DNA from: Mizuhopecten yessoensis
Taxonomy: Eukaryota
NCBI RefSeq assembly: GCF_002113885.1
Contig: NW_018403664.1
Span: 482,063 to 546,062, forward strand
Direction: 5' to 3'
DNA length: 64,000 nucleotides
Positions 18,535 to 63,824 of the stretch are shown piece by piece. The stretch's first letter is position 1; each line of letters opens with the position of its first letter. The position numbers and the translations under genes were made by a program. The notes under the pieces are model-generated. The model did no database searches, was not told the origin of the DNA, and worked only from the letters and a program-made list of their open reading frames with translations.

Positions 18535-21500
18535 AATTCCAACTGGGTGACGACGGTTCCTTTGAAGTGACAGATGACGTCCTGCAAACGTTCTGGGACA
18601 AAGGTTACATACTTATCAGGCGAGTAACAGTGCTGTTTGTCAATACTTTTGTATCTAGTAAATATGGGCTAAGATACATGTTCTTCAATCGACTTTCAAT
18701 CTATGCTATCCTGATACGTCTTGTCATAAATATTTCTTGGCAGCAACACGAGCATGTTTTAAATAATCTAATTTGATTGATGTTTAGGGGGTTACTGGAC
18801 AAAGAGGAGCTGACTAAGGTCAAAGAGGTCATTGAAAGTCCTGAAGTACTTAAGTTCCAGTACGGAGTGAGTATACATCCTACAAACCCAGTTTTATACA
18901 AGAGATGGTCGACTTATCTATGCTTGAGTTGTTTTGAACTTTATTAATATCATTCTAAAATGGCTTACTGGTTACATTGCTAACTTGATCTTGGTACTAG
19001 CTTACTCGCAGATTTAACTACTTACTTATCTGTACCATTACTTATTTGTTATTATCATGATTGCTTTCACTAAGTCCTCGTTCTCATTGCCTTCATATTG
19101 TTCTCAGTAATACTTTCATTTCATTTCATCACATTTTATTGAGTAAACAATAGGATTGAACAGCAGGCTAGGCCTATATAAGTTCTCTCCTTAGGTTGAC
19201 ATGACAAAGACAAAGATGAATGAAATGGTTTGTAAGAAAATATTGATGCAAATTATATATAATAAGTAGCATATATCCCCAGTCTGTATATAGCAGATGG
19301 TATAGGGGAGATAATTCCATGTATGTTTCAATTACATATAAATATTTAACTGATATTTTTAGCTATACAATGCTCTTATTAAAAAGTCAATCATAATGAA
19401 TTAGTAAAAGGAAAGCAATGCCCTAATGATATGTTAAACAGAGAAATTGCTACAATTGTAAATTATTTTGCAAGTCATTAATGCCCCCTGTTCATACTCT
19501 GCTGCTGTTGCATGAAGTAGTTAAAAGTATAGAACCATTTAGTATCAATATATATCAATGGTAGGAGTGATAAAAAGTAAGGGATACAACAACATCAAAA
19601 TATAAAAAATAAAATGAGGCAATTCAGCTAGAAGATTTTGAAATTGTAGTGTATGTGTAAGATGTATTGCCAGTGTTCTATGTGTAAATCTTTCATCCCA
19701 TCGAGTTTCAGACAAAATGTCACTAACGGCCTCTAACGTTCACAAATCATCAACTCGAGAAGAATCCAGATTCGACCACAGAACACTAAGCAAAACTTAG
19801 CACAATTATGTTTTACTTGATTGCACCCATCAGTAAAAACAGCACCCAAAGCTGAATCCTTTAGGTGTATAGTATAAACATCAATGTAGATATAACAAGC
19901 AGTAGAATCACATAATGGTTTAGGGACAATACTTTATCAATTATGACTATATATAACAAAATTTATAGATTGTTTTGATTAATTAAACAAGTCTTCTTGT
20001 GTTGTATATATATTTAAGAACACTACCAAGTATAGATTTATTTTCAGTATTGTTTAACATAGTGCTTCCATTAAGAAGTGGTTTACTATCAAGATTAACC
20101 GGACACACTTCAAAAATCTCATTTATTAAAGTTTGTCTCTCATCAGTATACATTGGACATGGTAACAGATAATGGGTAGCAGTTTCATAAGCATCACCAC
20201 ACAGACAAGATGGAGACTCTTTCAATTGATCTTTGAACAGATCATAGTTCAGGTTACTCGCCTCATTTCTCAGTTGACATAAGATACTTTACAACTTGTT
20301 CTCCTTTCATTTTGTAAAAAAATTGTCCTGTGCGTCATTTCTAAATAATTTCACCATGCAGAGACCCGACAAAAGCGGCAAGGAACCAAAGCTCATACTG
20401 TGGCAACATCCAGGTGAAGACGTCACAGGAATGGTGGCTCGCTGCCATAAGGTGGCAGGTACATGTGATAAGGTATATAAACATGTATTCAATGGAACAT
20501 ATTTCAAATTCCGTATTATATATCGTCTAAAAATTTATTTCTGTTAAACAAGATCAATTTGTCTAGGTTATTTACAACCTTCTGGAAATTATAAAAAGGA
20601 TATCAATTATGGTTTAACATTTGCTGCAAAATTTCTCAAATGGGACCTTATGAAGAAATCCCGAGATCTTAGTAAAACTATATATATCAACAGCAGTATT
20701 TTGAAAAAAGAAAACATTTTTATATATATTTATAAATCGTTTAATCGATTCTGTAATTTATCGTTAAAATAACTATAGGCGTTTGATTTCCATATATATG
20801 ATATCACATATACATAATATTAATACAATATATGAACAAAGTTTCAAATTATTTTAACGATCCAAATAATGTTTGTTTAGATTATGAAAAAAACTGATTT
20901 CAAATATTGTTCAACATATAATATATATCAGAGGCATTTTGATGAGAAGAAATCAGATAACACCAGTGCGAATTATGTGTTAAGTAATGCCTAATAGTGT
21001 AATCTACATGTTGAGCAGGGTTAGGGTTAAGCATTAGCATTAGCCAGATGAGTGTTCAGTATATACTTATACTTACTGACGTTTGGTGTCTGTTCACAGC
21101 TTCTTGGAGGTGAGGTTTACCATTACCATACCAAACTTGTAACCAAGGAACCCTACATTGGAGGCACATTTGAATGGCACCAGGATTATGGGTACGTTAC
21201 TAGAGACAGGGCTATTGGTACGTTACCTGATTACGTTACTGGAGACGACAGGGTTATTGGTACGTTGGCTTAATACGTTAATAGAGACAGGGCTATTGGT
21301 AAGTTACTAGAGACAGGGCTATTGGTAAGTTACTAGAGACATGACAATTGGTAAGTTACTAGAGACAGGCTATTGGTGAGTTACTCAAGACAGGGCTATT
21401 GGTAAGATACTAGAGACAGGGCTATTGGTATGTTTCTAAAGACATGATTTTTGGTAAGTTAACAGAGACAGGGCTATTGGTAAGTTGATAGAGACGGGGA

Positions 21501-24500
21501 TATTGGTTTGTTACTAAATGCAGGACTATTGGTACGTTAGCTTAATACGTTACTAGAGACAGGGCTATTGCTAAGTTACTATAGAAAGGGCTATTGGTTA
21601 GTTACTAGAGACATGACTATTGGTATGTTACTAGAAACAGGGATATTGGTAAGTTACTATAGACAGGGCTATTGGTATGTTACTAGAGACAGGGCTATTG
21701 GTATGTTACTAGAGACAGGGATATTGGTAAGTTACTAGAGACATGACAATTGGTAAGTTACTAGAGACAGGCTATTGGTAAGTTACTCTAGACAGGGCTA
21801 TTGGTAAGATACTAGAGACAGGACTATTGGTAAGTTACTAGAGACATGACTATTGGTAAGTTGCTAGAGACAGGGATATTGGTACGTTACTAGAGACAGG
21901 GCTATTGCTAAGTTACTATAGAAAGGGCTATTGGTTAGTTACTAGAGACATGACTATTGGTATGTTACTAGAAACAGGGATATTGGTAAGTTACTAGAGA
22001 CATGACTATTGGTATGTTACTAGAAACAGGGATATTGGTAAGTTACTAGAGACAGGGTTATTGGTACGTTACTAGCGACAGGGCTATTGGTAAGTTACTA
22101 AAGACAGGACTATTGGTAAGTTACTTGAGACAGGGCTATTGGTATGTTACTAGAGACAGGACTATTGGTGAGTTACTATAGACATGACCATTGGTAAGTT
22201 ACTAGAGACAGGGCTATTCGTATGTTACTAAAGACATGATTTTTGGTAAGTTTATAGAGACAGGGCTATTGGTAAGTTGATAGAGACAGGGATATTGGTA
22301 CGTTACTAGAGACAGGGCTATTGCTAAGTTACTATAGAAAGGGCTATTGGTTAGTTACTAGAGACATGACTATTGGTAAGTTGCTAGAGACAGGGATATT
22401 GGTACGTTACTAAATGCAGGACTATTGGTACGTTACTAGAGACCGGGGTATTGGTACGTTACCTAAGGACGTTACCGGAGACGACAGGGCTATTGATACG
22501 TTAGCTTAATACGTTTCTAGAGACAGGGATATTGGTAAGTTACTATGGACAGGGCTTTTGGTAAGTTACTAGAGACATGACTATTTGTAAGTTACTAGAG
22601 ACAGGCTATTGGTGAGTTACTCAAGACAGGGCTATTGGTAAGATACTAGAGACAGGGCTATTGGTATGTTTCTAAAGACATGATTTTTGGTAAGTTAACA
22701 GAGACAGGGCTATTGGTAAGTTGATAGAGACGGGGATATTGGTTTGTTACTAAATGCAGGACTATTGGTACGTTAGCTTAATACGTTACTAGAGACAGGG
22801 CTATTGCTAAGTTACTATAGAAAGGGCTATTGGTTAGTTACTAGAGACATGACTATTGGTAAGTTGCTAGAGACAGGGTTATTGGTACGTTACTAGAGAC
22901 AGGGCTATTGGTATGTTACTAAAGACATGATTTTTGGTAAGTTAACAGAGACAGGGCTATTGGTAAGTTGATAGAGACAGGGATATTGGTACGTTACTAG
23001 AGACAGGGGTATTGGTACGTTACTAGAGACAGGGCTCTTGGTAAGTTACTATAGAAAGGGCTATTGGTTAGTTACTAGAGACATGACTATTGGTAAGTTG
23101 CTAGAGACAGGGATATTGGTACGTTACTAGAGACAGGGCTATTGCTAAGTTACTATAGAAAGGGCTATTGGTTAGTTACTAGAGACATGACTATTGGTAT
23201 GTTACTAGAAACAGGGATATTGGTAAGTTACTATGGACAGGGCTTTTGGTAAGTTACTAGAGACATGACTATTTGTAAGTTACTAGAGACAGGCTATTGG
23301 TAAGTTACTCTAGACAGGGCTATTGGTAAGTTACTAAAGACAGGACTATTGGTAAGTTACTAGATACATGACTATTGGTAAGTTACTAGAGACAGGGCTA
23401 TTGGTAATTTACTAGAGACAGGACTATTGGTAAGTTACTAGATACATGACTATTGGTAAGTTACTAGAGACAGGACTATTGGTATGTTACTAGAGACAGG
23501 GATATTGGTAAGTTACTAGAGACAGGGCTATTGATATGTTACTAGAGACAGGGCTATTGGTATGTTGCTAGAGACAGGGCTATTGGTATGTTACTACAGA
23601 CAGGGCTATTGGTATGTTACTAAAGACATGATTTTTGGTAAGTTTATAGAGACAGGGCTATTGGTAAGTTGATAGAGACAGGGATATTGGTACGTTACTA
23701 AATGCAGGACTATTGGTACGTTACCTGAGTACGTTACTGGAGACGACAGGGCTATTGATACGTTAGCTTAATACGTTTCTAGAGACAGGGATATTGGTAA
23801 GTTACTAGAGACAGGGCTATTGGTAAGTTACTAGCGACATGACTATTGGTAAGTTACTAGAGATATGACTATTGGTAAGTTAATAGAGACATGACTATTG
23901 GTATGTTACCAGAGCCAGGGCTATTGGTACGTTAGCTGAAGACGTTACTAGAGAAAGGATAATGGGTAGTTTATCTGAGTACGTTACTAGACACAGGACT
24001 ATGGGCACGTTGCCTGAGTACGTTTCTAGACACAGGACTCTGGGTACGTTATCTGAGTACGTTTCTATACACAGGACTATGGGTACGTTACCTGAGTACG
24101 TTTCTAGACGCAGGACTATGGGTACGTTATCTGAGTACGTTTCTATACACAGGACTATGGGTACGTTACCTGAGTACGTTACTGGAGACGACAGGGCTAT
24201 TGATACGGTAGCTTAATACGTTTCTAGAGACAGGGATATTGGTAAGTTACTAGAGACAGGCCTATTGGTATGTTACTAGAGACAGTGCTATTGGTACGTT
24301 ACTAGAGACATGTCTATTGGGAAGTTACTAGAGACAGGACTATTGGTATATTACTAGAGACATGACTATTGGTATGTTACCAGAGCCAGGGCTATTGGTA
24401 CGTTAGCTGAATACGTTACTAGAGAAAGGATAATGGGTACTTTATCTGAGTACGTTACTAGACACAGGACTATGGGTACGTTACCTGAGTACGTTTCTAG

Positions 24501-26428
24501 ACACAGGACTATGGGTACGTTATCTGAGTACGTTACTATACACAGGACTATGGGTACGTTACATGAGTACGTTACCTGAGTACGTAACTAGACATAGGAC
24601 TATGGATACGTTACCTGAGACAGGACTAATGGTACGTTACGTAAGGTACGACAGGCTGGTAACACAGACAGTTTTATATTTTAGGGTATAACACACCGCA
24701 ATGGAAAGAAGCACCTGTTTATAATTGTTTTGGTATTGTGGAATCACAACATGATAGAAGCTGTAAGAAATCACTGTCGATGAGTTTGGAAGTGAAACGC
24801 CCATGCTTGCACATCTGTAGATACTTGTAAAGTTTAATAGTGAGCTGACAATTATAGTTATAGTGAAGGTAAATATTTTAGTATTAGGGATGCGGTGACC
24901 ATTATCATTAGGTTCGGTTAACTCTTCTAGAGTCGGATTGTTAGCTGAGAATAACTTTTATTCTGTAGGTAAATCTTACAGAGTTTGCTAGTTAGGTGAG
25001 AATGACTGTTAATCTGTAGGTAAATCTTGCAGACATTGGTTGTTAGGTTATCATAATTGTTACTGAAGGTAAATGTTCCAGACTTTAGTATTGAGAAAGA
25101 GGTGACCATTATGTTATACTGAAGGTAAATGACAGGATATGAAGTTTTCTATAACAGATACTGGTACAAGTATGGCTGTGTGTTCCCGGACATGTTTGTG
25201 AGTGTGGCAGTCGATCAGTGTAAGAAAGCCAATGGATGTCTTCAGGTACGGTTACTGATTTAATAAAATTGTAATGATTTTAACGCTGGTCACAAAATTA
25301 TTTAAATGACATTATTCTTGAAATGTTTGCGTTGTTGACGTGTTATGTGTGCTGTATAATAATCATCTGAAGACCTCGAATTCTTAAATATTATTTTGAA
25401 TTTGACTTCACATTCACATTCACATTCACATTGCGGTTGCGTCGATGAACAGAAGATTTGAAAATCGATAATAATACCTTTTCTTTCTGCATGCAATTGA
25501 AAACCTTCGAGGCAAATTAACGTTATACACAACAAAGTAGTTTTTAACGGGTAATTAGATCAGCATCACTAAAGAATGTTGTATAAAGCGTTTATGATTC
25601 GAAACAGCCGGAAAATTTCATTGAAAAACCTGGAAGGAAACGCGGTTATCACTTGTATTATTTTTGTATGATTCGTAGACCTTGGCTGAAATTCAGCCAC
25701 TTCAATATACATGTAGTCAGTGGGTAGCATTTAATGAACGAACCCTAATGATCACTTTGTGATTTGCAGTTACTGAGCGGATCTCACAAATGTGGCCGGA
25801 TTGACCATACAATCGTGGCTCACCAGACTGGGGCTGACGTGGATAGGGTCAAGGAGTTACAAGGAAGACTTCCGCGCGTGCATGCCGAACTCGACGCAGG
25901 TATACTGAGATAGAATTCCTGACTTCAGTGTGTTCAGTTCTTCATTTAAAGAAGTACCATGTTTTTGTAATTGATTTTATAAGATAAATACCGGTATGAA
26001 CAACTTCGACTGAATGTTTTTATTGTTGTGTGTTGTTTGTTTTTTGCACTACGGCAAATAACATGCATATACTTATAACATTTTACCGCCAGGTGATGCA
26101 CTATTCTTCCACTGTAACGTTCTCCATACGAGTAGTGACAACACTAGTGCCGATATCAGACGGGCGCTCATTCTAGCCTACAACCGGAAGTCAAACAACC
26201 CAGGACCGCACCAAAAACACCCAGGTTATCGTCCAATCAAACAGGTACACGTGTAGATATATCGCCTGTTGAAATATTGAAAACGTTCGTCTATATTCAG
26301 TTCTGCTGGTACTTATATCTATCTATTTGTTTACATTAATATAGGTTTCTGACGACGCTGTAAGAAGATGTACAAACATGACCGACTTCGAGGGAAAAGA
26401 TTTCTGGATAGTAGAGCCACAAATTTAA
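18535..26428 (+). CDS. PhyH-family Fe(II)/2OG dioxygenase copy A (L-proline trans-4-hydroxylase/ectoine hydroxylase-like), first exon not identified; exons 18535-18619, 18788-18866, 20362-20472, 21100-21191, 25158-25245, 25770-25899, 26093-26244, 26345-26428
   Basis: The spliced frame is open: ..[77 protein letters not shown]. The HxD..H iron triad and the Arg 11 residues after the distal His are present. Exon phases match copies B and C. Confidence 0.9.
19113..20303 (-). mobile_element. 5'-truncated LINE 3' end (CR1/L2-like) in the intron after exon 3 of copy A
   Basis: The minus-strand peptide [36 protein letters not shown] is a C-terminal CxC..H..C domain typical of LINE ORF2. It is followed by a UTR, AATAAA and a (GAAAT)n tail at about 19113-19128. 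CTTTCATTT occurs at both ends (19113 and 20304). Confidence 0.75.
21181..24640 (+). repeat. 26-bp satellite (roughly 130 copies) derived from the exon-5 end and splice donor of copy A
   Basis: The genuine junction CAGGATTATGG|GTACGTTACTAGAGA is the first unit. The consensus is CAGGGCTATTGGTAAGTTACTAGAGA. Distal variants contain CAGGACTATGGGTACGTTACC. Confidence 0.95.
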
Positions 26429-26534
26429 CAAGGTGGCTGACTGAACAAATCAGTGAAGGAGCACCTGTTCACGCACAACACTGACATATGGATTATTCCA
26501 AGTAGCATACTAATCGGACAAATGTTATGTGAAG

Positions 26535-33259: not shown

Positions 33260-33664
33260 GGATACTTGGGTAGTGGAGATCAGGGCTCGGTTGAGTGATG
33301 AAGGGTGGGATGACTGGGTAATGGAGATCAGGGCTCGGCTGAGTGATGAAGGGTGGGATACTTGGGTAATGGAGAGCAGGGCTCGGCTGAGTGATGAAGG
33401 GTGGGATGACTGGGTAATGGAGATCAGGGCACGGCTGAGTGATGAAGGGTGGGATGACTGGGAAATGGAGATCAGGGCTCGGCTGAGTGATGAAGGGTGG
33501 GATGACTGGGTAATGGAGATCAGGGCTCGGCTGAGTGGCGAAGGGTGGGATGACTGGGTAATGAAGTCCAGGGCTTGTTTGAGTGATTAAGGGTGGGATG
33601 ACTGGGTAATGGAGATCAGGGCTCGGCTGAGTGATGAAGTGTGGGATACTTGGGTAATGGAGAG
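33260..33664. repeat. 48-bp G-rich tandem repeat upstream of copy B, ending at a single N
   Basis: GGGTAATGGAGATCAGGGCTCGGCTGAGTGATGAAGGGTGGGATGACT, about 8 copies. Confidence 0.93.
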
Positions 33665-33665
33665 N

Positions 33666-33826
33666 GCTTGTCCAGCCGTATCTGCTTTGGTCGGGTCCCA
33701 GAAATCTTTACCGGTAAAATCATTGTAATTAGTAACGTATATACATTATTGGGTGATTTGTGTTGCAGTATTTCACGTGAGTTGTCCATATGACTAAATA
33801 TGATCTTTCTGACAGCAGGTCTGTAT
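33666..33826 (-). repeat. inverted duplications: 33666-33733 = reverse complement of copy-B exon 9 (39350-39417); 33733-33826 = reverse complement of 39938-40031
   Basis: Direct reading. The first segment is a 68-bp exact match. The second is about 94 bp with a 2-nt difference. Confidence 0.92.
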
Positions 33827-33873: not shown

Positions 33874-36800
33874 ATGGCGACACTGACAGGTGGTAAGTTA
33901 AACAAGACTAATAAACATGGTATATTATAAAGAGATCCTCTATATTTGTGATATTATTTTTTGTTGTGAAGAGATACTATAAACTTATATAGTTAAACGC
34001 ATTAAAGTCGTTCTAGTCTCCGTGGAGTATAACATATAAATAGATAGACATTACCACTATAAATCATATATCGCTCAAATAAAGGAAGACATTTTCTTTG
34101 AACTTATAACGCTGGATGCATTGCATTGGATACCTATTTATGTTCGAAAAATGACTGATTACTCGGATTGTGTGAGAAATTAAAAAATAACTGGGAGATA
34201 ACAAATGGAAACAATATGTTTAAAATCCTATTCTTACCCACTATTATGGGTACTACTGTACCCTACTACTAACTGTTTATTGGTAACCTATATATGTAAT
34301 ACGTATCAGTTGCATTCTCGATACAACTATTGATCTGGATTTCTTATTTTTTTCTTCACACAGTCTACTCGTACACACCGGAGGGTTTCCGGGTGACGAA
34401 AGATATGAAGAAGAGTTTCGATGATCAGGGATATATCTTAGTCAAGTAAGTGTTTGGCATCATCATCTGCATTTGCTTTGATAATTATAGATTATGAAGA
34501 AATTTATGTATATATATCAAAATGTTTTTGTTTTTTTGTTAGTTCTATTTGCTGTGTAAAAGTAAATATTTTAAGAATTAGGATGTAAACCCTTTGATAG
34601 AAAACAATACTGAACAACACTTCCTATATCTAATGACAAGATCAAAAGACTAAGCAATGTTTCTATCCAATATTATTTCACTAACTGATAATTTTTGGTT
34701 CGGTAAAAATTAACGCATTAACAGGTCAGAACAATTAATGGAAATGCTTTAATAGTGTTTTTTTGCAATACGTTTAGTAATGCGCACATCATTAAAAGGT
34801 GAAGCAAAAGCTTTTAGATATTTAAATAATATTGTGCCAGTATATATATTTATTTAAAACACACCGAACTCATGTTGAAAAAAATGACACTTTGGTAATA
34901 TTTATTATACAGGGGCTTGTTCGACCAGGAGGAGATGACTAACGTGAAGAAGGTGTTTGAGGACGGAAACATCATCGAGGATAACGGGTTTACAGTTAGT
35001 TTTGTCCGTCGGTATATGCTTGCTCAATAGAGAAATATCATAACGAATATTGTACTTGGAAATTAATGGCGAAAAAGGTAATTCTATAAGTTAAATAAAT
35101 GACAATCACAATACACAAGACGAACTTTACGTTTAAGACCAACGCTATCCCGTCACACTTACGAACGGCTCTAACAGGTTGCCTCCTATATGTATAGCTA
35201 TGTTCAATGTGAAATCACTTGTTTTTATTTGATGTTACAGATGGAAGATGCAGATGGAAAAAAAGGGAGGATGGTGTTGTGGAATAGTCCCGGAAATGAC
35301 GTATCTGGAATGATGGCACGTTGTGAGAAGGTCGTCAATACTTGTGAAGACGTAAGAACAAAACAAATCGCTTGATCACATGGTACTCACAAGAAGTCAA
35401 AAATGATTAATTGCGATTGTTGTCTTAAAGGATGAACGTAAGACACATACTTTATATTGCACCTACAACATTTGGTAATAGATCCAGCACCTACAACATT
35501 TGGTAATAGATTCAGCACCTACAACATTTGGTAATAGATCCAGAACCGAAAACATTTGGTAATAGATCCAGCACCTACAGCATCTGGTAATAGATCCAGC
35601 ACCTACAACATTTGGTAATAGATCCAGCACCTAAAATATTTGGTAATAGATCCAGCACGCGAAAAAATGAATTACACTACATCATACGGCTGTTTTGTCA
35701 TCCTAGGAAGAATCAATCCTATGGCTTAAATGTAAATTGGTCCAAACTACTGATGACACACAACAAAGGGGGGATGGTGACGTTACATCCCTAAATGACA
35801 GGAACTTCAATACTTAACGTAGTACTGGTTACAGCAATATTTCAAACGGCAAACCCCGGGGACAAAGTAATCCAACATCAGAGCCTCCCACCTTGTATCT
35901 TGAAAGATAAATGAGAGTAACACATTCACATTAGACTACACATTAACATTTTATAATAAACCGAGTATGCCAAAATGAATTACGACGCAACAGCTATGAC
36001 TTATGTTACACAAGTTATTATTATCATTTTACATTTATAGTATCGGTTGTTCAAAGTAGAATAAATCAAGCACATTGTTTTCACTGCGAATATACTTTGA
36101 TGCGAACTAGAGAATGTATATATGTGGAAATAGTTTTTTTTATATAATAAACAAATACATTTGAACTCACGAATCATGTCATGTATTATTTGTTTAGCTG
36201 CTTGGAGACGAAGTTTACCATTACCATTCCAAATTGGTTTACAAAGATCCCTTCAGCGGAGGTGCCTTCGTCTGGCACCAGGACTACGGGTAAATAATGT
36301 ACAAATAATGATATTAATTTCTAATATTTCGGTTTCTACCACAATGTTGAGTCGTCTTTTCGTATCGAAATTTAATTTTTGTCCTTGAAAAAAATATTTA
36401 GCCTTTGAAACGTCATGATAACAATTATTCACTATCTGTGTCGTCATAACTGCGAAGTACACATAAAGTAATGGAAATATTACCGTGCAATCTGTCTGTT
36501 ACATTGACATGGTGTTGCAATCCTCTCTATACTCCCCAGGTACTGGTATCACAACAGTTGTCTGTTTCCCGACTTGATGACGGTGTTCATAGCTATCGAC
36601 AAATGCTCACGTTCAAATGGATGTCTGCAGGTAACATTTTACATTATAACACAGCATTTGTGATGCAATGCGTGATTTGTACATAAGATAGACTATTGGT
36701 TTCTTTTCAAACTTCGTATTCATTGCATAGCTATATGTACACATACCTAACATAAAATGTCTCTGACAGATCCTGCCTGGTTCTAACAAGTGTGGTCGTA

Positions 36801-48000: not shown

Positions 48001-51000
48001 TGGGTTAAAGATCAATACTACAAAAACACAGGTTATATGGATAGGCAGTAGAAAATATAGTGACCAAACTTTCCTTCCAGACTTGCATCTACAATGGGGG
48101 AAGGATAAGTTCAACTTTTTGGGTATAGATTTTTCCGTAGATTTAAGTGAGATTCCAAGAATGAATTTTGACAAAAAGATTGTTAAACTTCAAGCTCTTA
48201 TTAATAATTGGAATAGACGGAGTTTGACTCCATTAGGTAGAATTAGTATCATAATGGTTTCCATTAATTTTACTTCAGCACGAGAACAGTGTCCATTAGT
48301 TAATCATATTCAACTGGGATGCCCACTACATGTGTTAACTTTCTGATATCAAGAAATGTTCAATTGTCGAGAAAACAGCGACCAAAATTTGTAAACCTTG
48401 ATACATACGTTTTGTTTCCGGAGCTCATCTCTAATACCAATGCTGTTCAAATTTTCCGTATGAATCAATGGTATTGCAGAGGGTTTTCTGGTGTAATTTT
48501 TCACTTTTCTGATTTCAAACATTGTATTTGTAATAGAAACTAAACCTATACATTTTGGCGCGAATTCCCCTTTCCTATCGCATCACAAAAACCGTTTGTT
48601 ATTTGATGCTCAAACCTGCCATGAAAGCAAATTCCACTATAGAAGGATTTTTTCTTCGATGTTTCCAAAATGAGTTATTTTCGAGGTTATCAACAAAGCA
48701 AGCTCATATTTACATAATTTGATATTTCAAAAATAGCAAAAGGGAGATTTTGACAACGTCTATTGTTTGTAACGTGATGTTTTCTCTTACAAGATATAGT
48801 ACGAGCATTATCGACGTTTGGTTCAAAAGGCTGTTTTCAAATTCTTTTTGTAGGTAGACGATGGACAGGGGAAAAAGGCAAAAATGGTCACGTGGAACAA
48901 TCCCGGAAATGACGTATCTGGAATGATAGCACGATGCGAGAAGGTCGTCAATACTTGTGAAGACGTAAGAACAAAACATGTCGTTTGATCATATGGCACA
49001 CGTATGAGTAAATAGTTCAGTCTTACACTAATAACACTAGAATCACAGAATTGCTTATTGCGATTGTCTTTGTTGTTGTATAGGTTTTTATATTAATTCA
49101 TCCCATCATCGACATTTATACCATTGTGAAAACCTAACGTATCACAAACACATAATATAGAATATGACAACTAGGTACATCACCTGATTGTTATGGGTTT
49201 ATAACATATAATTTGTAATGAAATAAAATATACTACACACTTAATAAAACCGACACCAAACATTAACTCTAGCTTGTTGATTAATTTGGTTTCTGACATT
49301 TTCCATCTTGATACATAATATCCAGTATTTAGTAGAATACCTGAGTTTACAGATTATACCTGATAGGATTGTTTGTTTAGCTGTTGGGAGGCGAGGTGTA
49401 CCAATACCACGGAAAACTGCTGTACAAGGATCCCTTCACTGGTGGTGCCTTCTTCTGGCATCAGGATTACGGGTAGGTCATACACAAAGACTCCTCCATC
49501 GTTCGCATAGTCCATTCCTCTGACGCCAGTACTAGTGGTAAATGCTATGCTTAAATCCACCGACATGCAATGTATTTCTTTAGCATAAAACTAACTGGCA
49601 AACAATGGGCAAAGACCCGTTTACATAGAGAGGGGCCAGTCATCCTCAATGAAAGCAGGAAAGCAATGTACCTCTTGACAGGGGGAAGAGTCGATCTTCT
49701 TATGAACAATAAACACAATACCCTTTATGGTTCTTGTTACTTCTAAGCGAGGTTAAGTGCGAAACAAACCCCAATTTACAGGGAGAGCGGCTAAGCGACG
49801 ATCATGTTGTTCCTTTCAAAGAAGAGTTTCCACTTACATAAATGCTAAAGACAATAGCGACAAAGAATGGTATTAGAAATATCGCACAATGCAGAATCAA
49901 TTCATCAAGTATAATGGTTAGATGAAAAGGAAACTGTTTTAAGTGTTTGCACATTTATAAAACGTTTAGCGTTTGTAAAAGAATATAAACCAGCAATCGC
50001 GGATACCAATATTGTGATGTCTGTACAAAGGACACTAACGCATCATATTGCTATCGAGTCTGCAAAGGGTGTTGTCCACATGATGTTTGGGGATTTCTTT
50101 GTCTGCATTTCTTTTGTTGAATTTGGAAGCAGGTTACCGTTATGATTATTTTAATTATTCTGATTAAAAGTTATAAAAAGGGATATAAATGACTTGCCCC
50201 CATTGAGTTAATTTCAGTATAATGATACAATGATGAGCATTTTCCTTTAAATACGAAAATGTCATCTCATTCAATTTATAGAACTTAAAATTAAAAGTCA
50301 AAGTTTAAATTTTCTTTTCTCAGAAGTAACTTACCAACATCCACTGTTTATTGAGTTTGAAAGTCGATGTTTATCCGCTGCTAGTGAGTATGTTCTTGGT
50401 CCATGATTATCTAGATAATTAAATCGCACATATGGTCTATGACATGGCATTAAAAACACATGCAACTTCTGACATTTTCAAAAGTACGACAATAACGATC
50501 GACTCACTAGTAAACCTATGACAATTTTAATTAGTCCAATTGTTGGATCTCTAAACTTCCTCAACATACATACCAACCTGCCATCTGTTTTTGGACAGTT
50601 AAACATTCGTCTAACTTCTTACCTACTAAGCCAGCCTTGAAATCTACGTCGTCATCATGAACTCCGATCATAATTTAAGTCTGAGGTCGTTGTATTCCGC
50701 TCTATACTTTCCAGGTACTGGTATTACAACAGTTGCCTGTTTCCCGACATGTTGACAGTGTTCATAGCCATCGACAAATGTACCCGATCGAATGGATGTC
50801 TGCAGGTACGATTCTAGTAACCAGAGAACATTTTTGATATGATGGCTATTTTGCATATTGAAAAACATTTGCCCGTGAGAGTTGTCTCTATATACTGTAC
50901 CGTACACTCTCGGTGCCATAACTATCATTTAACGGTTGACAGATCCTACCCGGATCCAATAGATGTGGCCGTATTGTCCATGACGTCGTCTGCGGTCAGA

Positions 51001-54000
51001 CTGCCGCCAACACTGAGCGAGTGTCTGCTATTGAGAAGGCCTGCCCGAAGGCCTACGTAGAGATGGAGCCAGGTAAGTGGTTTTACACCTACACAACTGT
51101 ACTTTTCGCTGACCCAATGCAATGGTGCTTGTATCACTCAATGAAAACCAGGAAAAAATTAACATTTCATCTTCATTTTGTTTTGCTTCATTAACGTTTA
51201 GGTACTACTGTGGACAAAACAAGCTTTAAACACGATTTAAACAAAACAAACAATGACATGTATACTTTTTATATCCACACACATCAAATAAGTTGATAGA
51301 GTGATCATCTCTCACCGATAACGCAAAACCCGACACGTGTATATCTTCGTCCGTTGAAAAACGAAGTAACATTAAACGGTATATCTTGGAAGTTTAATAA
51401 ACTATTCATTATAAAGTATATTTTGGAATTCTGATAGCATAACTTTATTTCCACTTTTGGTTTTCTTAACATGTTATATTGCAGGTGACGCATTATTCTT
51501 CCACTGTAACCTTCTGCACTCCAGTTCTGGCAATGAGAGTGCTGATAGACGTTGGGCGTACCTAATAGCCTATAACACCAGGGCGAACAACGCCTTAGTG
51601 CGCCATCACCACGCCCAGTACACGCCCCTACACAAGGTAAATCTGCCCACCCAGTCTATATAGATAATAAAGCGGTAGCCAAGCACACACCCTTACAGAG
51701 GTTGTAATAATATCCTGACGACATACATCCTTAAAGACATCAGTAAAAGCCGACATACAAAGTAGATAAACTGCAACGCAGGATAAACTCCCTCTTAAAG
51801 AGCAGTAGCCCCACCCTCGTAAACACTACTACAAAGTCTACAGAAAAATAAAAGTCATTAGTTTAGCCACTTCACAAGAAATTGGAGGCCCCGGGACGTC
51901 CATAATACACCACCGGCAATGAGCTTTACACCAATGACCTCATCTGTTCGATGTACAGCAGAGAGCATGACGTATATCTCCATACAAGGTACAGTACAGT
52001 CAGCTGCACACAATAGGCACGCCTAAACATGGTAGAGAAACTTCCATCCAGTAAACATACTACACAAGGTAAATAATATAACACACGTTCATGCCCAGGG
52101 GTGTTAAATAGGGAAATTTCAGCCGAGGGTTTCGCCAAATTTGAAATTCCCGAGGATAGGAAAAATCCACCCTCGGGGTTTTTAAATTTGGTAAAACCCA
52201 AGGCCTTGCCTTCCCTTTTCTACATCCTTTGGCATGAAAGAGCATTTTTCTCTCATTCCAACTTCCAGAATAAGCTCAGAAGCCTTGAAAATGCGTTTGA
52301 ACTGGCTACCATTTTGAAAAAATCAATGCTTTTTTGACGAAAACGAATCTGTCAGTGAGAGTAAGCTTGCTCTATATTTCTAAACAGAGTTTGCGCCGAA
52401 AAAATAATCTCATATTTTTAACGTGTACGGCAAATATATCGTAAAAGGTTTTCATTTCATCAAGTCGCCTTTTCCGCATTGCGGCATCGTAGTTACCCAA
52501 ATTCTTGACATCACGTCATTGTTGAGCTATTGTGACGTCACGTCACGTTACATGGGTTGTAAGAAATGTTTATTACTCCTTTCTTACACTGGACAGCTAC
52601 ATATATGTATATCTTACAAACACGTATATGAGAGAATACTATAATGTTATGGGTGTGGTCCGTGGACAGGGATATCTCAACCCTCGGATACAAAATGTAA
52701 GAACTCGGCTTTCGAGTGGTGGACAGCCAAACTCTTATTCGAGGGTTGAGATTTCCCTGTCCACGGATCATACCTATGTTTGATTCTCTCCCATACTCGA
52801 AATAAACATGCCAGTGTCAATACTCCGTGACCTTCACATGCTTGTATTCAATGACCCATATGAATGCAATTATATGTTAATTCTATAGATGTGATGAACC
52901 CTGAACATAAAATCAGAAATCCATTAAAAGCACAACGTTAACAATGGGTTTTTTTTATTTAATAATCCATCAACAGTAATATATCAGTTAATATATCGTA
53001 TAATAAGTACAGAATTAATAAAAATTTAACAGTCAAAACAACAGATCTATTTCAAACGCCGACGTCATTTGGCGCACTTGCCTGGCGGAAATAATTCCAT
53101 TCATCAGTGACATCATCGCGCGTGTAGGCCGAGGAAACGACCGGTTTATCTATTCACGGGTCAATTCCTGTCTTTCACGGGCACGTATGGAAGAAATCTC
53201 CATCCAAAAGAGACCTCCTAAAAAATTAAGTAAATCACATCAGGTAGACAACAATACACTACAAAAAGGAAATCCTCCTTGTAGAAAAATTCAACACAAG
53301 AAAAAAAATCCCACCTAGTAGATTCTCATCCAAATGGTAGAGAAATTCTACCATACTAAGCACGTGAACTCTCGCTTTTGCTAGGGGACATCCTGTCCTT
53401 ACCAGGTTGTCATTTATTACACAACACATGATTATACGACAAATAATTAAATACATATATACATTCATATAACAAACTACATAACTATGTTTGGCGAAAG
53501 GGGCAACTCAGTTACTACAAAATAAACTAAATATCCTTCTCCTGGATTTTTCGTCAGAAGAAGAATAGCATGTAGTGTCCAGTTAAATATCATCATCTTT
53601 AAAATCTAGCGGACCGCCAACAATGCAGTGTTGGAACAGTTCTTGGCTAGAGCTACTGATGAGTATGACAGAAGAGGATAATAACTGGACATCATGTATA
53701 TTGTAATGAGCTATACCCCATCACGGTGTAGCTTGCTGAGCCACCAGGTCCGGATGAGGAATAGGTGTCAGTATGGTTAAACAGATATATAGATAGATGA
53801 TCATCCCGTATTACACTATGCCTCATCTCGGTGCAGCTTGATGAGCTACCAGGTCCGAATGTATAACTAACGTCAGATGTGTTCCATTATTATAGTATAT
53901 GATTAACTAGCAAAGATTGTATTTCATTAGTTTTATTTACAACAATAGTATAGAATGAATGTCATAGATATATATACGTCACAGTCATGTTCATTTCAAT

Positions 54001-54168
54001 CTAAACAGTTACAACCATTGTTATGATTTTTATCCACAGGTGCCTGATAGTGCCGTTAAGGATTGCACTAATTACAGTGATTTCTCTGGAAAGGATTTCA
54101 TGGACCCAACCAACCTAGATTTGCCAGAAAACGCTCTTCTCAAAACACAAGCCAAGTGTGACAAGTAG
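45033..54168 (+). CDS. PhyH-family Fe(II)/2OG dioxygenase copy C, complete, 295 aa; exons 45033-45051, 45509-45590, 46164-46245, 48854-48964, 49381-49472, 50715-50805, 50943-51072, 51485-51636, 54040-54168
   Basis: Exon lengths (19/82/82/111/92/91/130/152/129) and phases are identical to copy B. Motifs [21 protein letters not shown] and [23 protein letters not shown] are present, and the protein ends AKCDK*. Confidence 0.93.
46562..46720. repeat. 23-bp tandem repeat, ~7 copies
   Basis: ACCGTAACCTTACCGTCACACTA. Confidence 0.9.
46792..46931. repeat. perfect inverted repeat, 64-bp arms and 12-nt loop (palindromic non-autonomous element)
   Basis: 46792-46855 is the exact reverse complement of 46868-46931. 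The core ATCTCAACCCTCGGA/CGAGGGTTGAGATTTC is shared with 52652-52774. Confidence 0.93.
47492..48254 (+). mobile_element. L1/Tx1-clade LINE fragment (reverse transcriptase) in intron 3 of copy C, spanning the gap 47511-47779
   Basis: [50 protein letters not shown]. Poly-T at 47492-47510 and direct repeats TGGTTTCC at 47484-47491 and 48255-48262. Confidence 0.9.
52085..52774. mobile_element. palindromic non-autonomous element(s) in intron 8 of copy C: imperfect hairpins at about 52085-52240 and 52652-52774
   Basis: GGTCCGTGGACAGGGATATCTCAACCCTCG / CGAGGGTTGAGATTTCCCTGTCCACGGATC, followed by TTGATT..CTCCCATA as seen after the 46792 hairpin. Confidence 0.6.
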
Positions 54169-54929: not shown

Positions 54930-55000
54930 TTGGACGTGCAAAGGCCTGGAGCCACCTGCTCGACCACGTGGGTTTTCTTCGAGTTCTCCAGTTTCCAGCC
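54930..55000 (+). mobile_element. degraded V-domain-like SINE remnant
   Basis: CGTGGGTTTTCTTCGAGTTCTCCAGTTTCC resembles the core at 27298-27331. Confidence 0.4.
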
Positions 55001-55221
55001 GGATAAACGTACAATAAAGCAAAATAAACAAATGTGGTACTTAAAGTTGAATAGAACACGGTAAAATAATTTGACCGATTATGATATATATCGTAAACGA
55101 ATTTGGTATCCCCGTAAAAAGAGAAGGATAAACGAACTTGAAGCTCCACGGAAACAAAACAGCAATGTAAAAGAATTGGATACTCCACGTAAAAAACAGA
55201 ACAGAAAAAACGAATTCGGTC

Positions 55222-55858: not shown

Positions 55859-56058
55859 GATATATGTTACCCATACGGCTACATGCTATGGACGAAAATG
55901 AAAATACCTGTCGCAGTTTTACGAATTTGATCACCCCTGTTTTTTATTATATTGACCACTTTCCCAAAAGAGGGCCACTCTTTTGTCATATACTATTTGT
56001 TTTTGCATATTTAAGAGTTGATCCTCGGATGGGAAAGTGTTGATAGAATTAAGTCTAA

Positions 56059-56704: not shown

Positions 56705-57597
56705 TAAGAAACCCCGTCACTTTCATAGATATTGACTTGCAGTATTATATTATCTCAACAGTTCGAAAATTCATATTCAATAGGTTTTATATCCATTCCA
56801 TGCATTTTTGCTATTAAAAATTATTCACTCGTTAATATTTTTTTCCGTTTTCATAACTGCCGGCTCAGTGAAATATGGGCAGTTATCCACCATAGCTCTT
56901 CAGTATCTCATTGCAGTATTGATATAAAGAGGCATGTGGCAATGTTTATTTTGTATCTTAGAGATACAGCATCACGTAAACTACCTGATTACAATGTATG
57001 CATTATATGTTCTAAAGTTCAAATTCCAACTATGCATCCAACTTATCTAATAGTAATAGAAACTGGGTTAGGTCACACATTATGATATGTTCCTGTTCAA
57101 ATACATCTACACATAAACTGCTGTTTGAGTAAACATTGCTCTGTACGTGTAAGAACACAAATGTGTGGACAATAAATATATCCGCGACGGCAATGGTTAA
57201 CAGCAACAGTAACAATGACAAACATTCAGACAAGTTTATGTGATCGTCCACAAAGAAGGAATTTTCCATTTGAAGTAGACTATTAATCACTATATCATAT
57301 GAACGTAGCACGTAATTAGGTGATATAACCTTCACAATTTGGTAATTATAAAATCCATGATGTAAATATCAATTAATGATGCACTAAGACTATCGACTCG
57401 AATACAATCTAAGTGTTAAGTTGTGATTGTTTTAAACTTTTGTAAGAAGATAGTATGTTTATACATCTTTTTAATAATCTTTTGTCGAACTTAATTGATG
57501 TAAATTAAGTAAGCATAAAATATTACATTTATTAACCTTCTCTTTCCTTACAAATATTCAGGTTGATATTCTCCATCGGGACAGCATAGAAGCTTAC

Positions 57598-58542
57598 TCC
57601 ATATCCATGATCCTTGAGGAGGCCTGTTTCCTGAAACCTCTTTCGTAGGGTTGTCATCTCCTCCTGGTCGAGCAAGCCCCTGTACGCTATAGCACAGCCG
57701 TCAAAGTTAACCTGTCACCATTGTGTGTTCACTATGGCAGTTGTTACTAACCCATCATTTTTACTCATTTAAAGTTGGGAAGATCCAAATGGTCTAATGG
57801 TGTAAGGATTTCTTCAGGTATATCGATAACCACTATAAATATGTTATTCACATACCATAATTGTGATGTTTCGTACATGTATTTGGCGCCATTACAGCTG
57901 TGATGAGAATATTCTTGCAATATTGGTCTCTATTTCAATATTTAATATAGATAATGTTGTTTAGTACTGTTCTCTGTTACAAGCTTTATATAGTAATTTA
58001 AAAATAAAGATTATCATAAATAATGAATAACCCCAACGATGTTGCTGAACGCTTACTTCACTAGGATATATCCCTGATCATCGAAGTTCCTCTTCATAGC
58101 CTCCGTCACCCGGACCTCTTCCGGTGAGAACGAATACACTGTATACAGAATAGCAGGGCTTTGTGATCAGCTTTAACATTAATGTGTTAAGTCCTAACGT
58201 AAAAGTTTTTTTAAATGTTATAAAAGACGTCTATAACATTATTATAATTACTATCCTGTTGATATCTTATAGCATACACATATCTATAATACAGAACAAA
58301 TGTATTATACTGTATTTACAAACATACAATATATAATGAAATAAGGTGTTGAGGGTTGGTGTGTCTTTCATCATTCGAAATCGAAATGTGAATCTTAGAT
58401 ATTTGAGTTATGCTTGATCAATGGTTACAAAATATCCCCATTAAACGTAAGTTCAAAGCAAAAAAAAAGTGTAGAGAGATTATCCATAGCCAACTATGTT
58501 CTTAATATTGTCAAACTTACCGCTGGTCATTGTCGACATCAT
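57598..58542 (-). pseudogene. PhyH-family dioxygenase copy D, exons 1-3 only (58542-58521, 58138-58057, 57679-57598); exons 4-9 not found
   Basis: MMSTMTS|[28 protein letters not shown]|GLLDQEEMTTLRKRFQETGLLKDHGYG, with intact GT-AG sites and 82/82-nt exons. I found no exon 4-9 homology between 54200 and 57597. Confidence 0.8.
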
Positions 58543-59437
58543 AAGGTTTGGTAGTTATATTACATGTCTCAGTGAGTATCAGAGAGAAGCTGGAACCATT
58601 GCAGAGCAGGTTTACACTAGAAACACAATTAAAACATCAGATAAACACTAAAATCAGTCAGCCATAACATACCAAGCAAACATACCCAACCGTATCGTCA
58701 AAGCCTGGTATGGCGTCAGAGTGCTTGAGAAATGGAGGACAACTTCATATTGAGAAAAGATTAAAAAAATTCCATCTGGATAAACGGACGGGTGAACCGA
58801 TATTTACGTCAATGTCTCACGGCCGTGCAGTGAACGTTGTCTTTACACAACTTGTTGGCATATGGCAGAACATTCTTATCAAACCTGTATCATTAAATAT
58901 TGGATTTTTCACGTTTGAAATATAAGGTATTGCAGTGAAAATGAATTTGATATTTTTTAAATGGGGCAAATTTAACCTTTTATTACTCTTTTGCCAGTGA
59001 AATATCGGATTCTATCAACTTGATAAAACTGATCTCTTTCACACTGTGACAAATATCAAAAGTGTCAAAATATCACATTTTGGTATTGACCAATCATAAC
59101 GGTATCTTATAGTCCCTGCATTCAAAAGCGATGATGTTTTGTTCAGACTCAAATGAAGCGACGGTAGAATAAGTGGTTGTTATGGTAAATGTTTGGTACA
59201 CATACTAAACTATTTACATAAATATACAATTAATAACATTTTTATAAGCAAACATACCAGAAAATAGCAGAAAGCGTCGGAATTGCGTTGAGTATCCCAT
59301 TCAAAATGGCGCGCAGCCTTGCTGTCAAGCGCGGCGTCATTAGAATATGGCGCTAATTATTACGCTTCTGATTCCCGCCCTTTAAATGCATTACATTTTT
59401 CATATTCTTGGCTTTAAAAATGTGATAAATAGAAAAA

Positions 59438-62073: not shown

Positions 62074-63824
62074 CTATTTTTCACATTTGGTTTGTTTTTG
62101 AAGAAGTTCGTTTCTGTCTGGGCTAGTTGGGTCCAAGAAACCCTTACCAGTGAAATCATTGTAATTCGTGCATTCCCTTACAGCACTGTCCGGCACCTGT
62201 GGATACAAACTTATGGCGATAAACATGTAGCATACGGAAAATAATCTTACATACGAGGAACAATATACTAGTGATAATAAAGCATATAAAACAAGTACGT
62301 TAAGATTTATTTTGATTCAGAATGGAAATTATACTGATTTTAATGAACACATCTTACACGTATTACAATACTGATACAAAATGGAAATACATCAGGTTGC
62401 ACTTTAAATGCAATATACTGATTTCAATGAATACATTTCAAATGTGTTAAGATATATTGACGCTAATCAAACACATCTTGTGTTATAATTAAATAAATGA
62501 AGAACGTGATATAGCTGTTATAATGAGATTTATGAGGCATATCTTACATCTGATATAATCTATAGGGAAACGTTTAATATTTTTACAATCATTATGGGTT
62601 AAATGTTGTGCTGGGGTGTGTACTTAGTGGGGTTTTCTTTACCTTGTTTAGTGGTGTATTTTATTCTATTGTGTAGAGTGGTGTACAGAAGTTTGTATAT
62701 TGGTATATACTGGGCAGGAATGCTCCGTATACATGCACCTTTGTAGTTGTGTACTAGCATGAACGGTATCTGTGAGCTCGGTTGTGGTGTATTGTATCAT
62801 ATATTCCGATATAAAGTAGGTGGGATGATTATTACCTTGTGTATAAGTATATACTGAGTGTGGTACACTACACATTCAAGATCAACATGAACGATTTCCC
62901 TATCGCGAACGTTCCCTTTATTGATAGTAACATCCCTATAGGAAGTTCATAGGTCGCACTTGATTCTACATTCATGGCGTTGCTTCTAATATCATGACTT
63001 CTGTGACGAATGTCTTATGCTGACAGACTAACTTATAACACAGTGTTTGGATATATGAGGATTAAAAGGGCAAGTCGACGCAATCATGATTGCATTTGAA
63101 AACATTCTATTTCCTTTTGTAATATGAATATCGTTTGTCTATGTCCATAAGTGTGAATTGTGGTTTTGATATCAATACCCTGGTTCTTACTTTGAACCCG
63201 TGTCATTAACTGAACTTGATCCAGATGTAAATATGATGTCATCAATGACACTGAAGACGCTTATTGTTCTTGGAGACACATTGCCTTTTGCTTCGTACAT
63301 TTAAAAAACGATAATCTCCGTGGAAATATTTCCTTTGTTCATAGTTTGCCCTGGTTTTGAGACCTAGTTAAGGGTTTATTTTTCTTTCGAGTGGTTTTAA
63401 TTTTTGTGTATAGTAATTTAATGGTCTGGAAATACTGTACCTCGAACATCAGTATTGATACATTTGTAGATATATGGTGGACTGTACTGTACCTTGTGCA
63501 GTCACGTATATTTGTTGTGGTGCTCTGTGAGCTATCCTTTGCTTAACACTAGAGGATATACCATGGGGGAATGTAATGTTCCTTATTAGAGGGATATACT
63601 AGGTAGATATTACTGTTATTTGTACATAATTTATCCTGATTTACCGAAAAAAATACTTTGTTTGTTGTTTACCTTGTGTAGGGGTGTGTACTGTGCGTGG
63701 TGATGTGGAACTAAGGGGTTGTTCGCCTTAGTGTTGTAGGCTATCAGGTACGCCCATCGTCTGTCAGCACTGTCATTGCCAGAACTCGTGTGCAGCAAGT
63801 TACAGTGGAAGAACAATGCATCAC
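62074..63824 (-). CDS. PhyH-family dioxygenase copy E, last two exons (63824-63673, 62196-62074); 5' part beyond the window
   Basis: [51 protein letters not shown]|[40 protein letters not shown]. Exon 8 is 152 nt as in copies A, B and C. Confidence 0.9.

What the first reader, a model, noticed from the sequence alone, without database searches (positions are those of the whole stretch)
18535..63824. Hidden tandem array of five PhyH-family Fe/2OG dioxygenases, a possible animal small-molecule hydroxylation locus
Seen: five paralogs share a 9-exon architecture. Three are on + and two on -, converging. The HQD..H iron triad and the 2OG-binding Arg are intact in A, B and C, and E retains the distal His and Arg. 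Established: the WHQD, NGCL..PGS and GD..FFH motifs mark the PhyH (PF05721) superfamily, which includes bacterial free-amino-acid hydroxylases (proline trans-4-hydroxylase) and ectoine hydroxylase EctD. These proteins lack the EctD signature (FxWHSDFETWHxEDG) and read FxWHQDYGYWY instead. They also have no signal peptide or C-terminal PTS1. Inference: this is an expanded, probably cytosolic hydroxylase set of unknown substrate, for example an osmolyte, amino-acid or algal-metabolite tailoring or detoxification pathway. The array may extend past the window.
Basis: partly seen in the sequence, partly recalled or inferred. Interest (0 to 1): 0.75.

Follow-up and report, generated by a model that had tools for sequence, protein, structure and literature searches.

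The report
Scallop PhyH-type dioxygenase gene cluster
This is a real cluster of four intact genes plus two gene fragments for iron/2-oxoglutarate dioxygenases in a scallop genome; at least two of the genes are already in public annotation, and the enzyme family is common in marine invertebrates, though nobody has shown what it acts on.

Summary

**What is there**
- Four intact genes: A, B and C on +, and E on -. E has only exons 8-9 inside the window; exons 1-7 lie up to 4.1 kb beyond it.
- "D" is a 3-exon 5' fragment.
- A small inverted piece of B's 3' end lies at 33.65-33.83 kb.
- The assembly gap at 47511-47779 falls inside intron 3 of gene C and costs no codon.

**Public annotation**
- C and E match public Mizuhopecten yessoensis proteins. 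C is "probable phytanoyl-CoA dioxygenase" and E is LOC110451821.

**Evidence that the genes are functional**
- All four keep the H-x-D...H iron triad, the 2OG arginine and all 25 family-invariant residues.
- dN/dS is about 0.2 and dS is 0.6-0.76, so they are old paralogs, not haplotypes.
- Pecten maximus has a matching tandem array. The genome holds about 19 copies of exon 8.

**Family placement**
- They are PF05721 members (112 bits). They are not EctD, PHYH or PHYHD1.
- The best fold matches are proline hydroxylase H11, EctD and GriE, at 20-24% identity.
- The nearest bacterial relatives (43% identity) sit next to sugar/cyclitol-type enzyme genes, so an amino-acid substrate is not assured.

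**Limits**
- Expression could not be checked.
- The scan noted a similar cluster on another piece of this genome (s1-549966).

The parts
18535..26428 (+). Gene A, exons 2-9. An older paralog lineage; exon 1 was not found.
   Evidence: Exons: 18535-18619 (GC donor), 18788-18866, 20362-20472, 21100-21191 (WHQD), 25158-25245, 25770-25899, 26093-26244, 26345-26428 (stop). The ORF is 272 aa with no internal stop. All 25 family-invariant residues are kept. In the tree A is sister to a Saccostrea protein.
33874..39451 (+). Gene B, 9 exons, 295 aa.
   Evidence: Exons: 33874-33892, 34364-34445, 34913-34994, 35241-35351, 36198-36289 (WHQD), 36540-36630, 36770-36899, 38754-38905, 39323-39451. All introns are GT-AG. 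B has a 1:1 ortholog in Pecten maximus, P0282: about 81% identity, SH-aLRT 99.
45033..54168 (+). Gene C, 9 exons, 295 aa. It spans the assembly gap in intron 3.
   Evidence: Exons: 45033-45051, 45509-45590, 46164-46245, 48854-48964, 49381-49472 (WHQD), 50715-50805, 50943-51072, 51485-51636, 54040-54168. Exons 2-9 are 100% identical to P0281, 'probable phytanoyl-CoA dioxygenase [Mizuhopecten yessoensis]'.
47511..47779 (.). Assembly gap (N), intronic.
   Evidence: The gap lies between C's exon 3 (ends 46245) and exon 4 (starts 48854). The two exons join in frame, and no residue is missing compared with B, E or P0281.
57599..58557 (-). Fragment D: exons 1-3 only.
   Evidence: Exon 1 ATG at 58542 or 58539 (MSTMTS|G, GTAAGT donor). 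Exon 2 is 58138-58057. Exon 3 runs from about 57680 to about 57600 (HSP 57690-57592). Splice sites are intact, but tblastn at E<=20 finds no exons 4-9 in 54200-57590.
62074..63824 (-). Gene E, exons 8 and 9. The rest lies outside the window.
   Evidence: In the window: 63824-63673 and 62196-62074. Exons 1-7 are in L001, at window-equivalent 68106-68088, 67800-67719 (GC donor), 67293-67212, 67029-66919, 66395-66304 (WHQD), 64489-64399 and 64260-64131. E equals P0275, LOC110451821.
33650..33826 (-). Rearranged inverted remnant of B's 3' end.
   Evidence: 33736-33650 (-) encodes a peptide like B's last exon. 33733-33826 is 97.9% identical, inverted, to 39938-40031 downstream of B.

Best explanation
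The region is an annotated scallop gene cluster, very probably from Mizuhopecten yessoensis. It holds four intact paralogs (A, B, C, E), a truncated 5' copy (D) and a 3' remnant.

Each intact gene encodes a soluble protein of about 295 aa, probably cytosolic. It is a non-haem Fe(II)/2-oxoglutarate dioxygenase of a distinct, biochemically uncharacterised PhyH (PF05721) subfamily. The subfamily's marks are WHQDYGYWY, NGCLQ(I/L/V)L.GS and HHHP.YTPL.KV.

Mechanism:
- Shown for the residues, inferred for the chemistry: Fe is held by H125, D127 and H214, and 2OG by R225 (P0281 numbering).
- Inferred: oxidative decarboxylation of 2OG makes a ferryl species that hydroxylates a C-H of a small, polar, free metabolite.
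- The substrate is unknown. An amino- or imino-acid-like substrate and a sugar, cyclitol or O-methyl substrate are about equally likely.

Evolution:
- B, C and E arose by duplication within scallops.
- A is an older lineage.
- The family has about 19 loci in this genome and is widespread in marine invertebrates.
For: Gene structure and integrity:
- Conserved intron positions and phases, with no internal stops.
- C equals P0281 and E equals P0275.
- All 25 family-invariant residues are kept in all four genes.
- dN/dS is 0.17-0.22 with dS 0.60-0.76 among B, C and E.
- Only exons align at the DNA level, at 69-88%.

Family placement:
- PF05721 scores 112-114 bits.
- The AF2 model has pLDDT 95.7.
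- Its best PDB matches are trans-3/4-proline hydroxylase H11, EctD and GriE, with TM 0.66-0.72 by query length.

Evolution and copy number:
- B, C and E lie in a pectinid-only clade (SH-aLRT 100).
- P. maximus has a tandem array of 279-, 295-, 295- and 293-aa PhyH genes.
- There are 19 exon-8 hits on 11 contigs.
- The named hits come from molluscs, echinoderms, hemichordates, amphioxus, Ciona, crustaceans, annelids, nemerteans, brachiopods, sponges and a ctenophore.
Against:
- No retrieved public protein matches A or B of this species. Only the best 120 hits were listed, so this is not evidence of absence.
- A's exon 1 was not found. A also changes 8 of 53 nearly invariant residues, including W226R and H243Q/H244K.
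- No member of the subfamily has been assayed, so hydroxylation, as opposed to demethylation, halogenation or desaturation, is inferred.
- Localisation was judged only by inspecting the termini.
Confidence: 0.8

Rival explanations
1. The enzymes are free amino-acid, imino-acid or ectoine-like hydroxylases, as the reader suggested and as NCBI's automatic name 'L-proline trans-4-hydroxylase-like' implies. They would tailor an osmolyte or amino acid.
For: - The closest solved structures by fold and by sequence all act on such substrates: H11 (L-proline), EctD (ectoine) and GriE (L-leucine).
- The animal-specific invariant charged residues D81, R185 and K271 are not kept in the bacterial relatives. 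They could bind a zwitterion; this is inference.
Against: - Identity to these enzymes is only 20-24%.
- The EctD equivalog model scores far below its cut-off.
- No ectoine synthase match was found in the genome, although the control search was also blank.
- The nearest bacterial relatives have a carbohydrate-type gene context.
Confidence: 0.3
2. The enzymes oxidise a sugar, cyclitol or O-methylated sugar-like metabolite, by hydroxylation or oxidative O-demethylation. The metabolite could come from the algal diet. This follows their closest bacterial relatives.
For: - P0136 and at least 68 homologs in Planctomycetota and Verrucomicrobiota are the nearest non-animal relatives. P0136 is 43% identical over 262 aa, including the C-terminal motif. 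They share 22 of the 25 animal-invariant residues.
- In 39 of 68 loci the gene is followed on the same strand, at a median of 29 bp, by a xylose-isomerase-like TIM barrel. In 19 of those a Gfo/Idh/MocA oxidoreductase comes next.
- Other PF05721 clades demethylate 2'-O-methyl nucleosides (PMC12709175).
- Nine PF05721 genes were up-regulated in queen-scallop digestive gland after a toxic-diatom diet (PMC6410316, Pfam level only).
Against: - These partner families are very abundant in such bacteria, and many of the loci are closely related, so the count overstates independence.
- 43% identity does not guarantee the same substrate.
- The enzymes tested in PMC12709175 lack the GYWY and YTPL motifs.
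- No partner genes lie in the scallop locus.
Confidence: 0.3
3. Part of the cluster is dead. Besides D, gene A and/or gene B would be unexpressed pseudogenes that still look intact.
For: - D is truncated.
- A lacks an identified exon 1 and carries a 3.4-kb satellite in intron 5.
- No public protein for A or B of this species appeared in my hit lists.
Against: - Both have intact ORFs, canonical splice sites and all 25 invariant residues.
- B has a 1:1 Pecten ortholog, and dN/dS is about 0.2.
- P. maximus has a 279-aa gene in A's position.
Confidence: 0.12
4. B, C and E are uncollapsed haplotypes or assembly duplicates of one gene.
For: They are similar proteins lying close together, and there is an assembly gap inside C.
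Against: - Protein identity is only 76-77%, and dS is 0.60-0.76.
- The introns do not align.
- B has its own ortholog in P. maximus, which has its own array.
Confidence: 0.01

Closest known systems
Trans-3/4-proline hydroxylase H11 (PDB 7E07, 8H7Y, 7DT0)
   Same: Best fold match: TM 0.72 by query length and 0.79 by target length. It has a WHQDY..W core motif, an HxD...H triad and the arginine. It is a soluble enzyme acting on a free small molecule.
   Different: Identity is only 22-24%. H11 reads WHQDYTFWHH and lacks the animal C-terminal HHHP.YTPL.KV extension. Proline hydroxylation has not been tested for the scallop proteins.
Ectoine hydroxylase EctD (PDB 4MHR, 3EMR; TIGR02408)
   Same: Best PDB sequence hit for P0281 (E 8e-18). 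It shares the fold, the triad and the conserved Trp after the HxD.
   Different: TIGR02408 scores 76-91 bits against a cut-off of 336.5. The signature WHSDFETWH is replaced by WHQDYGYWY. No ectoine synthase was found in the genome, though that search is inconclusive.
GriE, L-leucine 5-hydroxylase (PDB 5NCH)
   Same: Same fold (TM 0.70/0.81). It is the best PDB sequence hit of the bacterial relative P0136 (E 3e-23).
   Different: About 20% identity. It is a secondary-metabolism enzyme of Streptomyces.
Animal PHYH and PHYHD1
   Same: Both belong to PF05721, and both are characterised animal enzymes. PHYHD1 demethylates 2'-O-methyl nucleosides (PMC12709175).
   Different: The matches are distant: E 9e-12 for PHYH and 1.7e-6 for PHYHD1. 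The scallop proteins have no PTS2 or PTS1 by inspection. The enzymes tested in that paper lack the GYWY and YTPL motifs. These are not orthologs.
Uncharacterised PhyH proteins of marine Planctomycetota and Verrucomicrobiota (e.g. P0136, automatically named 'ectoine hydroxylase')
   Same: 43% identity over the whole catalytic domain and C-terminal motif. They share 22 of the 25 animal-invariant residues.
   Different: They are bacterial genes lying in operon-like order with a xylose-isomerase-like TIM barrel and Gfo/Idh/MocA genes. The animal-invariant D81, R185 and K271 are not kept. Their function is also unknown.

Membership tests
PhyH superfamily (Pfam PF05721) Fe(II)/2OG dioxygenases | Profile score above the gathering threshold. 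| tested here: met
   P0281 (gene C) scores 112 bits and P0275 (gene E) 114.4 bits against a cut-off of 22. Single exons reach only 13-26 bits.
PhyH superfamily (Pfam PF05721) Fe(II)/2OG dioxygenases | HxD...H iron triad and a 2OG-binding Arg. | tested here: met
   H125, D127, H214 and R225 are invariant in 121 family members and present in A, B, C and E. They align to the corresponding residues of EctD, H11 and GriE.
PhyH superfamily (Pfam PF05721) Fe(II)/2OG dioxygenases | Double-stranded beta-helix fold. | tested here: met
   The AF2 model has pLDDT 95.7. Foldseek probability is 1.00 to H11, EctD and GriE.
Ectoine hydroxylase EctD | Equivalog model TIGR02408 above its cut-off, and the signature F-x-WHSDFETWH-x-EDG. 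| tested here: not met
   The model scores 76.2 and 91.1 bits against a cut-off of 336.5. The sequence reads [15 protein letters not shown].
Ectoine hydroxylase EctD | Co-occurrence with ectoine synthesis genes (ectC). | tested here: inconclusive
   PF06339 has no match in the genome, but the control genomes also gave none.
L-proline trans-4-hydroxylase (NCBI's automatic name for relatives) | 2OG-dependent hydroxylation of free L-proline. | not testable with these tools
   There is only fold similarity, at 22-24% identity, to proline hydroxylase H11.
PHYH / PHYHD1 orthologs | Closest characterised animal relative, with peroxisomal signals for PHYH. | tested here: not met
   E is 9e-12 for PHYH and 1.7e-6 for PHYHD1, weaker than for the bacterial hydroxylases. 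The termini are MATLTGVYS... and ...KCEK, KCDK or EPQI, with no PTS1 and no R-[LVI]-x5-[HQ]-[LA] motif (by inspection).
   B, C and E have 9 exons. A has 8 found and 1 not found. D has exons 1-3 only.

The most novel reading that the evidence does not exclude
This is a metazoan enzyme family whose nearest relatives are dioxygenases in sugar/cyclitol-type gene cassettes of marine Planctomycetota and Verrucomicrobiota. In filter-feeding scallops it has expanded to about 19 loci as a battery that oxidises or demethylates diet-derived algal metabolites, such as methylated sugars, cyclitols or toxins. That would be an unrecognised animal route of small-molecule catabolism or detoxification.
Probability: 0.12. 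Interest if true: 0.6.

Novelty: new member of a known kind. Interest (0 to 1): 0.3.

Why it matters
- The genes belong to a conserved family of Fe/2OG dioxygenases that is found across marine invertebrates and has never been assayed.
- No vertebrate or insect appeared among the 120 best hits listed in either search.
- The family's automatic names (proline 4-hydroxylase-like, ectoine dioxygenase-like, PHYHD1) contradict one another.
- Naming the substrate would fill a gap in invertebrate metabolism and correct hundreds of annotations.
- The locus itself is an ordinary lineage-specific tandem expansion.

Tried and rejected
- **Exon-level searches.** Pfam and PDB searches with single exons were too weak to classify.
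- **Genome-wide Pfam search.** PF05721 did not flag the window, because the exons are too short.
- **Literature.** 'L-proline trans-4-hydroxylase-like' gave 0 papers. The PDB-code search and a broad bivalve search gave nothing relevant.
- **PHYHD1-type nucleoside demethylase identity.** Rejected as membership: the tested enzymes lack the subfamily motifs.
- **Haplotype artefact.** Rejected.
- **Further copies near the cluster.** None within 30 kb downstream or about 16 kb of readable sequence upstream. The 3.9 kb just before the window reads N.
- **A's exon 1.** Not found by pattern search. One weak candidate lies at 11955.
- The spliced models of A and B were built and compared only inside scripts. 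They were not sent joined to any database tool. For C and E the identical stored proteins P0281 and P0275 were used instead.
Full report
**Where the window lies**

The window is G000:C337:482063-546062, in a 988-Mb assembly of 82,659 contigs. Two NCBI Mizuhopecten yessoensis proteins sit on a contig of 991,337 bp, which is the length of C337. They are P0275 (LOC110451821) and P0281 ("probable phytanoyl-CoA dioxygenase"), and they match genes of the window. The genome is therefore very probably the Yesso scallop.

**Checking the observation**

- A six-frame motif scan found WHQD at 21175, 36273 and 49456 on +. It found GD..FFH at 26092, 38753 and 51484 on + and at 63808-63825 on -.
- Comparing all open frames with one another showed matching exon sets at four loci.
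- A profile of the largest exon, searched against protein representatives, gave 695 hits. These supplied full-length relatives.
- With P0275 as guide, tblastn and a splice-site search gave conserved intron positions and phases in B, C and E. All are GT-AG except one GC donor in E.
- The short first exon (MATLTG, MATLSG, MAKLTS + 1 nt) lies 0.3-0.5 kb upstream.
- Final models: B 33874-39451 (295 aa), C 45033-54168 (295 aa), and E at window-equivalent 68106-62074 (293 aa). Each has nine exons and no internal stop.
That is eight exons and 272 aa, with the same GC donor after exon 2 as in E. A's exon 1 was not found.
- E has only exons 8 and 9 inside the window. Its WHQD exon lies in L001.

**The fifth copy and the remnant**

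- On the - strand there is an exon 1 with ATG at 58542 or 58539, an exon 2 at 58138-58057 and an exon 3 at about 57680-57600. All have good splice sites.
- A tblastn run with 119 family proteins at E<=20 finds no exon 4-9 between 54.2 and 57.6 kb. D is therefore a truncated 5' copy.
- A further remnant at 33650-33826 (-) resembles B's last exon and a stretch downstream of B.
- No other copy lies within 30 kb downstream or in the readable 16 kb upstream.

**The assembly gap**

The gap at 47511-47779 lies in C's intron 3, between exon 3 (ends 46245) and exon 4 (starts 48854). The exons on either side have the same order, strand and phase as in B and E. The joined product is gapless against them and identical to P0281.

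**Are the copies real and separate?**

- B, C and E are 76-77% identical as proteins.
- At the DNA level only the exons align, at 69-88%.
- dS is 0.60-0.76 and dN/dS is 0.17-0.22.
- All 25 residues that are invariant in 121 family members are kept in A, B, C and E.
- In a tree of 90 sequences, B, C and E fall in a scallop-only clade (SH-aLRT 100). B pairs with Pecten maximus P0282 (99). A is sister to a Saccostrea protein (100).
- P. maximus carries a tandem array of four PhyH genes (279, 295, 295 and 293 aa, all on +) at the orthologous place.
- These results rule out haplotypes and show long purifying selection.
- Genome-wide, exon 8 has 19 hits on 11 contigs, often in pairs. This agrees with the scan's note s1-549966 of another such cluster.

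**What the proteins are**

- P0281 and P0275 score 112-114 bits on PF05721.
- They score only 76-91 bits on the EctD equivalog, whose cut-off is 336.5.
- The best PDB sequence hits are EctD (8e-18), proline hydroxylase H11 and GriE. PHYH (9e-12) and PHYHD1 (1.7e-6) are more distant.
- An AlphaFold model built on a 121-sequence alignment has pLDDT 95.7.
- Its best Foldseek matches are H11, EctD and GriE, at 20-24% identity.
- The alignments show that the distal iron ligand is H214, in NLLH. The FFH histidine (H209) is an Asp in EctD.
- The termini carry no hydrophobic leader, PTS1 or PTS2 (by inspection).

**Distribution and naming**

Relatives occur in molluscs, echinoderms, hemichordates, amphioxus, Ciona, crustaceans, annelids, nemerteans, a brachiopod, sponges, a ctenophore and an amoeba. 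They carry automatic names such as "L-proline trans-4-hydroxylase-like", "ectoine dioxygenase-like" and "PHYHD1". I found no paper that characterises a member.

**Clues to function**

- The nearest non-animal relatives are proteins of marine Planctomycetota and Verrucomicrobiota. A genome-contig scan found 439 relatives.
- P0136 is 43% identical to P0281 over 262 residues, including the C-terminal motif.
- Sixty-eight such proteins share 22 of the 25 animal-invariant residues. D81, R185 and K271 are specific to the animal proteins.
- In 39 of 68 loci the next gene on the same strand, at a median of 29 bp, is a xylose-isomerase-like TIM barrel. In 19 of those a Gfo/Idh/MocA oxidoreductase follows. 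This context suggests a sugar or cyclitol-type substrate.
- Other PF05721 clades demethylate 2'-O-methyl nucleosides (PMC12709175). The enzymes tested there lack this subfamily's motifs.
- Nine PF05721 genes were up-regulated in queen-scallop digestive gland after a domoic-acid-producing diatom diet (PMC6410316). That result is at Pfam level only.
- The substrate class therefore stays open between amino-acid-like and sugar-like.

**Limits**

- The spliced models of A and B were handled only inside scripts and were not sent joined to any search tool.

**Verdict**

This is a real gene cluster, already annotated for at least two of its genes. It belongs to a known superfamily but to an uncharacterised subfamily.

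Noticed in passing
window 21277-24640 (intron 5 of gene A): A 3.4-kb satellite with a 26-bp unit starts about 85 bp after the donor of the WHQD exon. The unit (..GGCTATTGG|TAAGTTAC..) resembles the exon end plus 5' splice site (..GATTATGG|GTACGTTAC..). This is the subject of scan note s1-519486.
   Followed up: partly
L001:995-2326 (window-equivalent 64995-66326, intron 5 of gene E): The same phenomenon occurs in a second paralog. There are 21 copies of a 63-bp unit (126-bp higher order, 99% matches) that begins inside exon 5. Each copy carries a ..YQDYG|GTAAGT pseudo-exon end with a consensus donor. B and C have no such array in this intron.
   Followed up: partly
window 18619/18620 and window-equivalent 67719/67718: Intron 2 has a GC-AG donor in A (CAG|GCGAGT) and in E (CAA|GCAAGT). 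B, C and D have GT at the same position. E's GC donor is backed by the identical public protein model.
   Followed up: partly
window 5504-6430 (+): A 309-codon open frame matches Pfam Innexin (E 2.6e-47). This is an innexin gene exon upstream of the cluster.
   Followed up: partly
window 1550-4075: A GC-rich (0.53) array of short tandem repeats is open in several frames. It lies next to an N run at 1191-1337.
   Followed up: no
window 40605-41449 and 41745-42971: Between B and C there is an 85-bp tandem repeat (9.9 copies, 99% matches) and a 27-bp repeat (45.7 copies). The 27-bp repeat creates spurious open frames of about 300 codons on both strands.
   Followed up: no
G000:C5523:244372-245346 (+): A PF05721 match lies in a 330-codon open frame without stops. 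This is an apparently intronless PhyH gene elsewhere in the assembly: a different subfamily, a retrocopy, or bacterial DNA.
   Followed up: no
L011-L090 (bacterial loci): A gene order of PhyH, then a xylose-isomerase-like TIM barrel, then Gfo/Idh/MocA is conserved in both Verrucomicrobiota and Planctomycetota. It is often flanked by DUF6807, sulfatase, and PSCyt/PSD1 with DUF1501 genes.
   Followed up: partly
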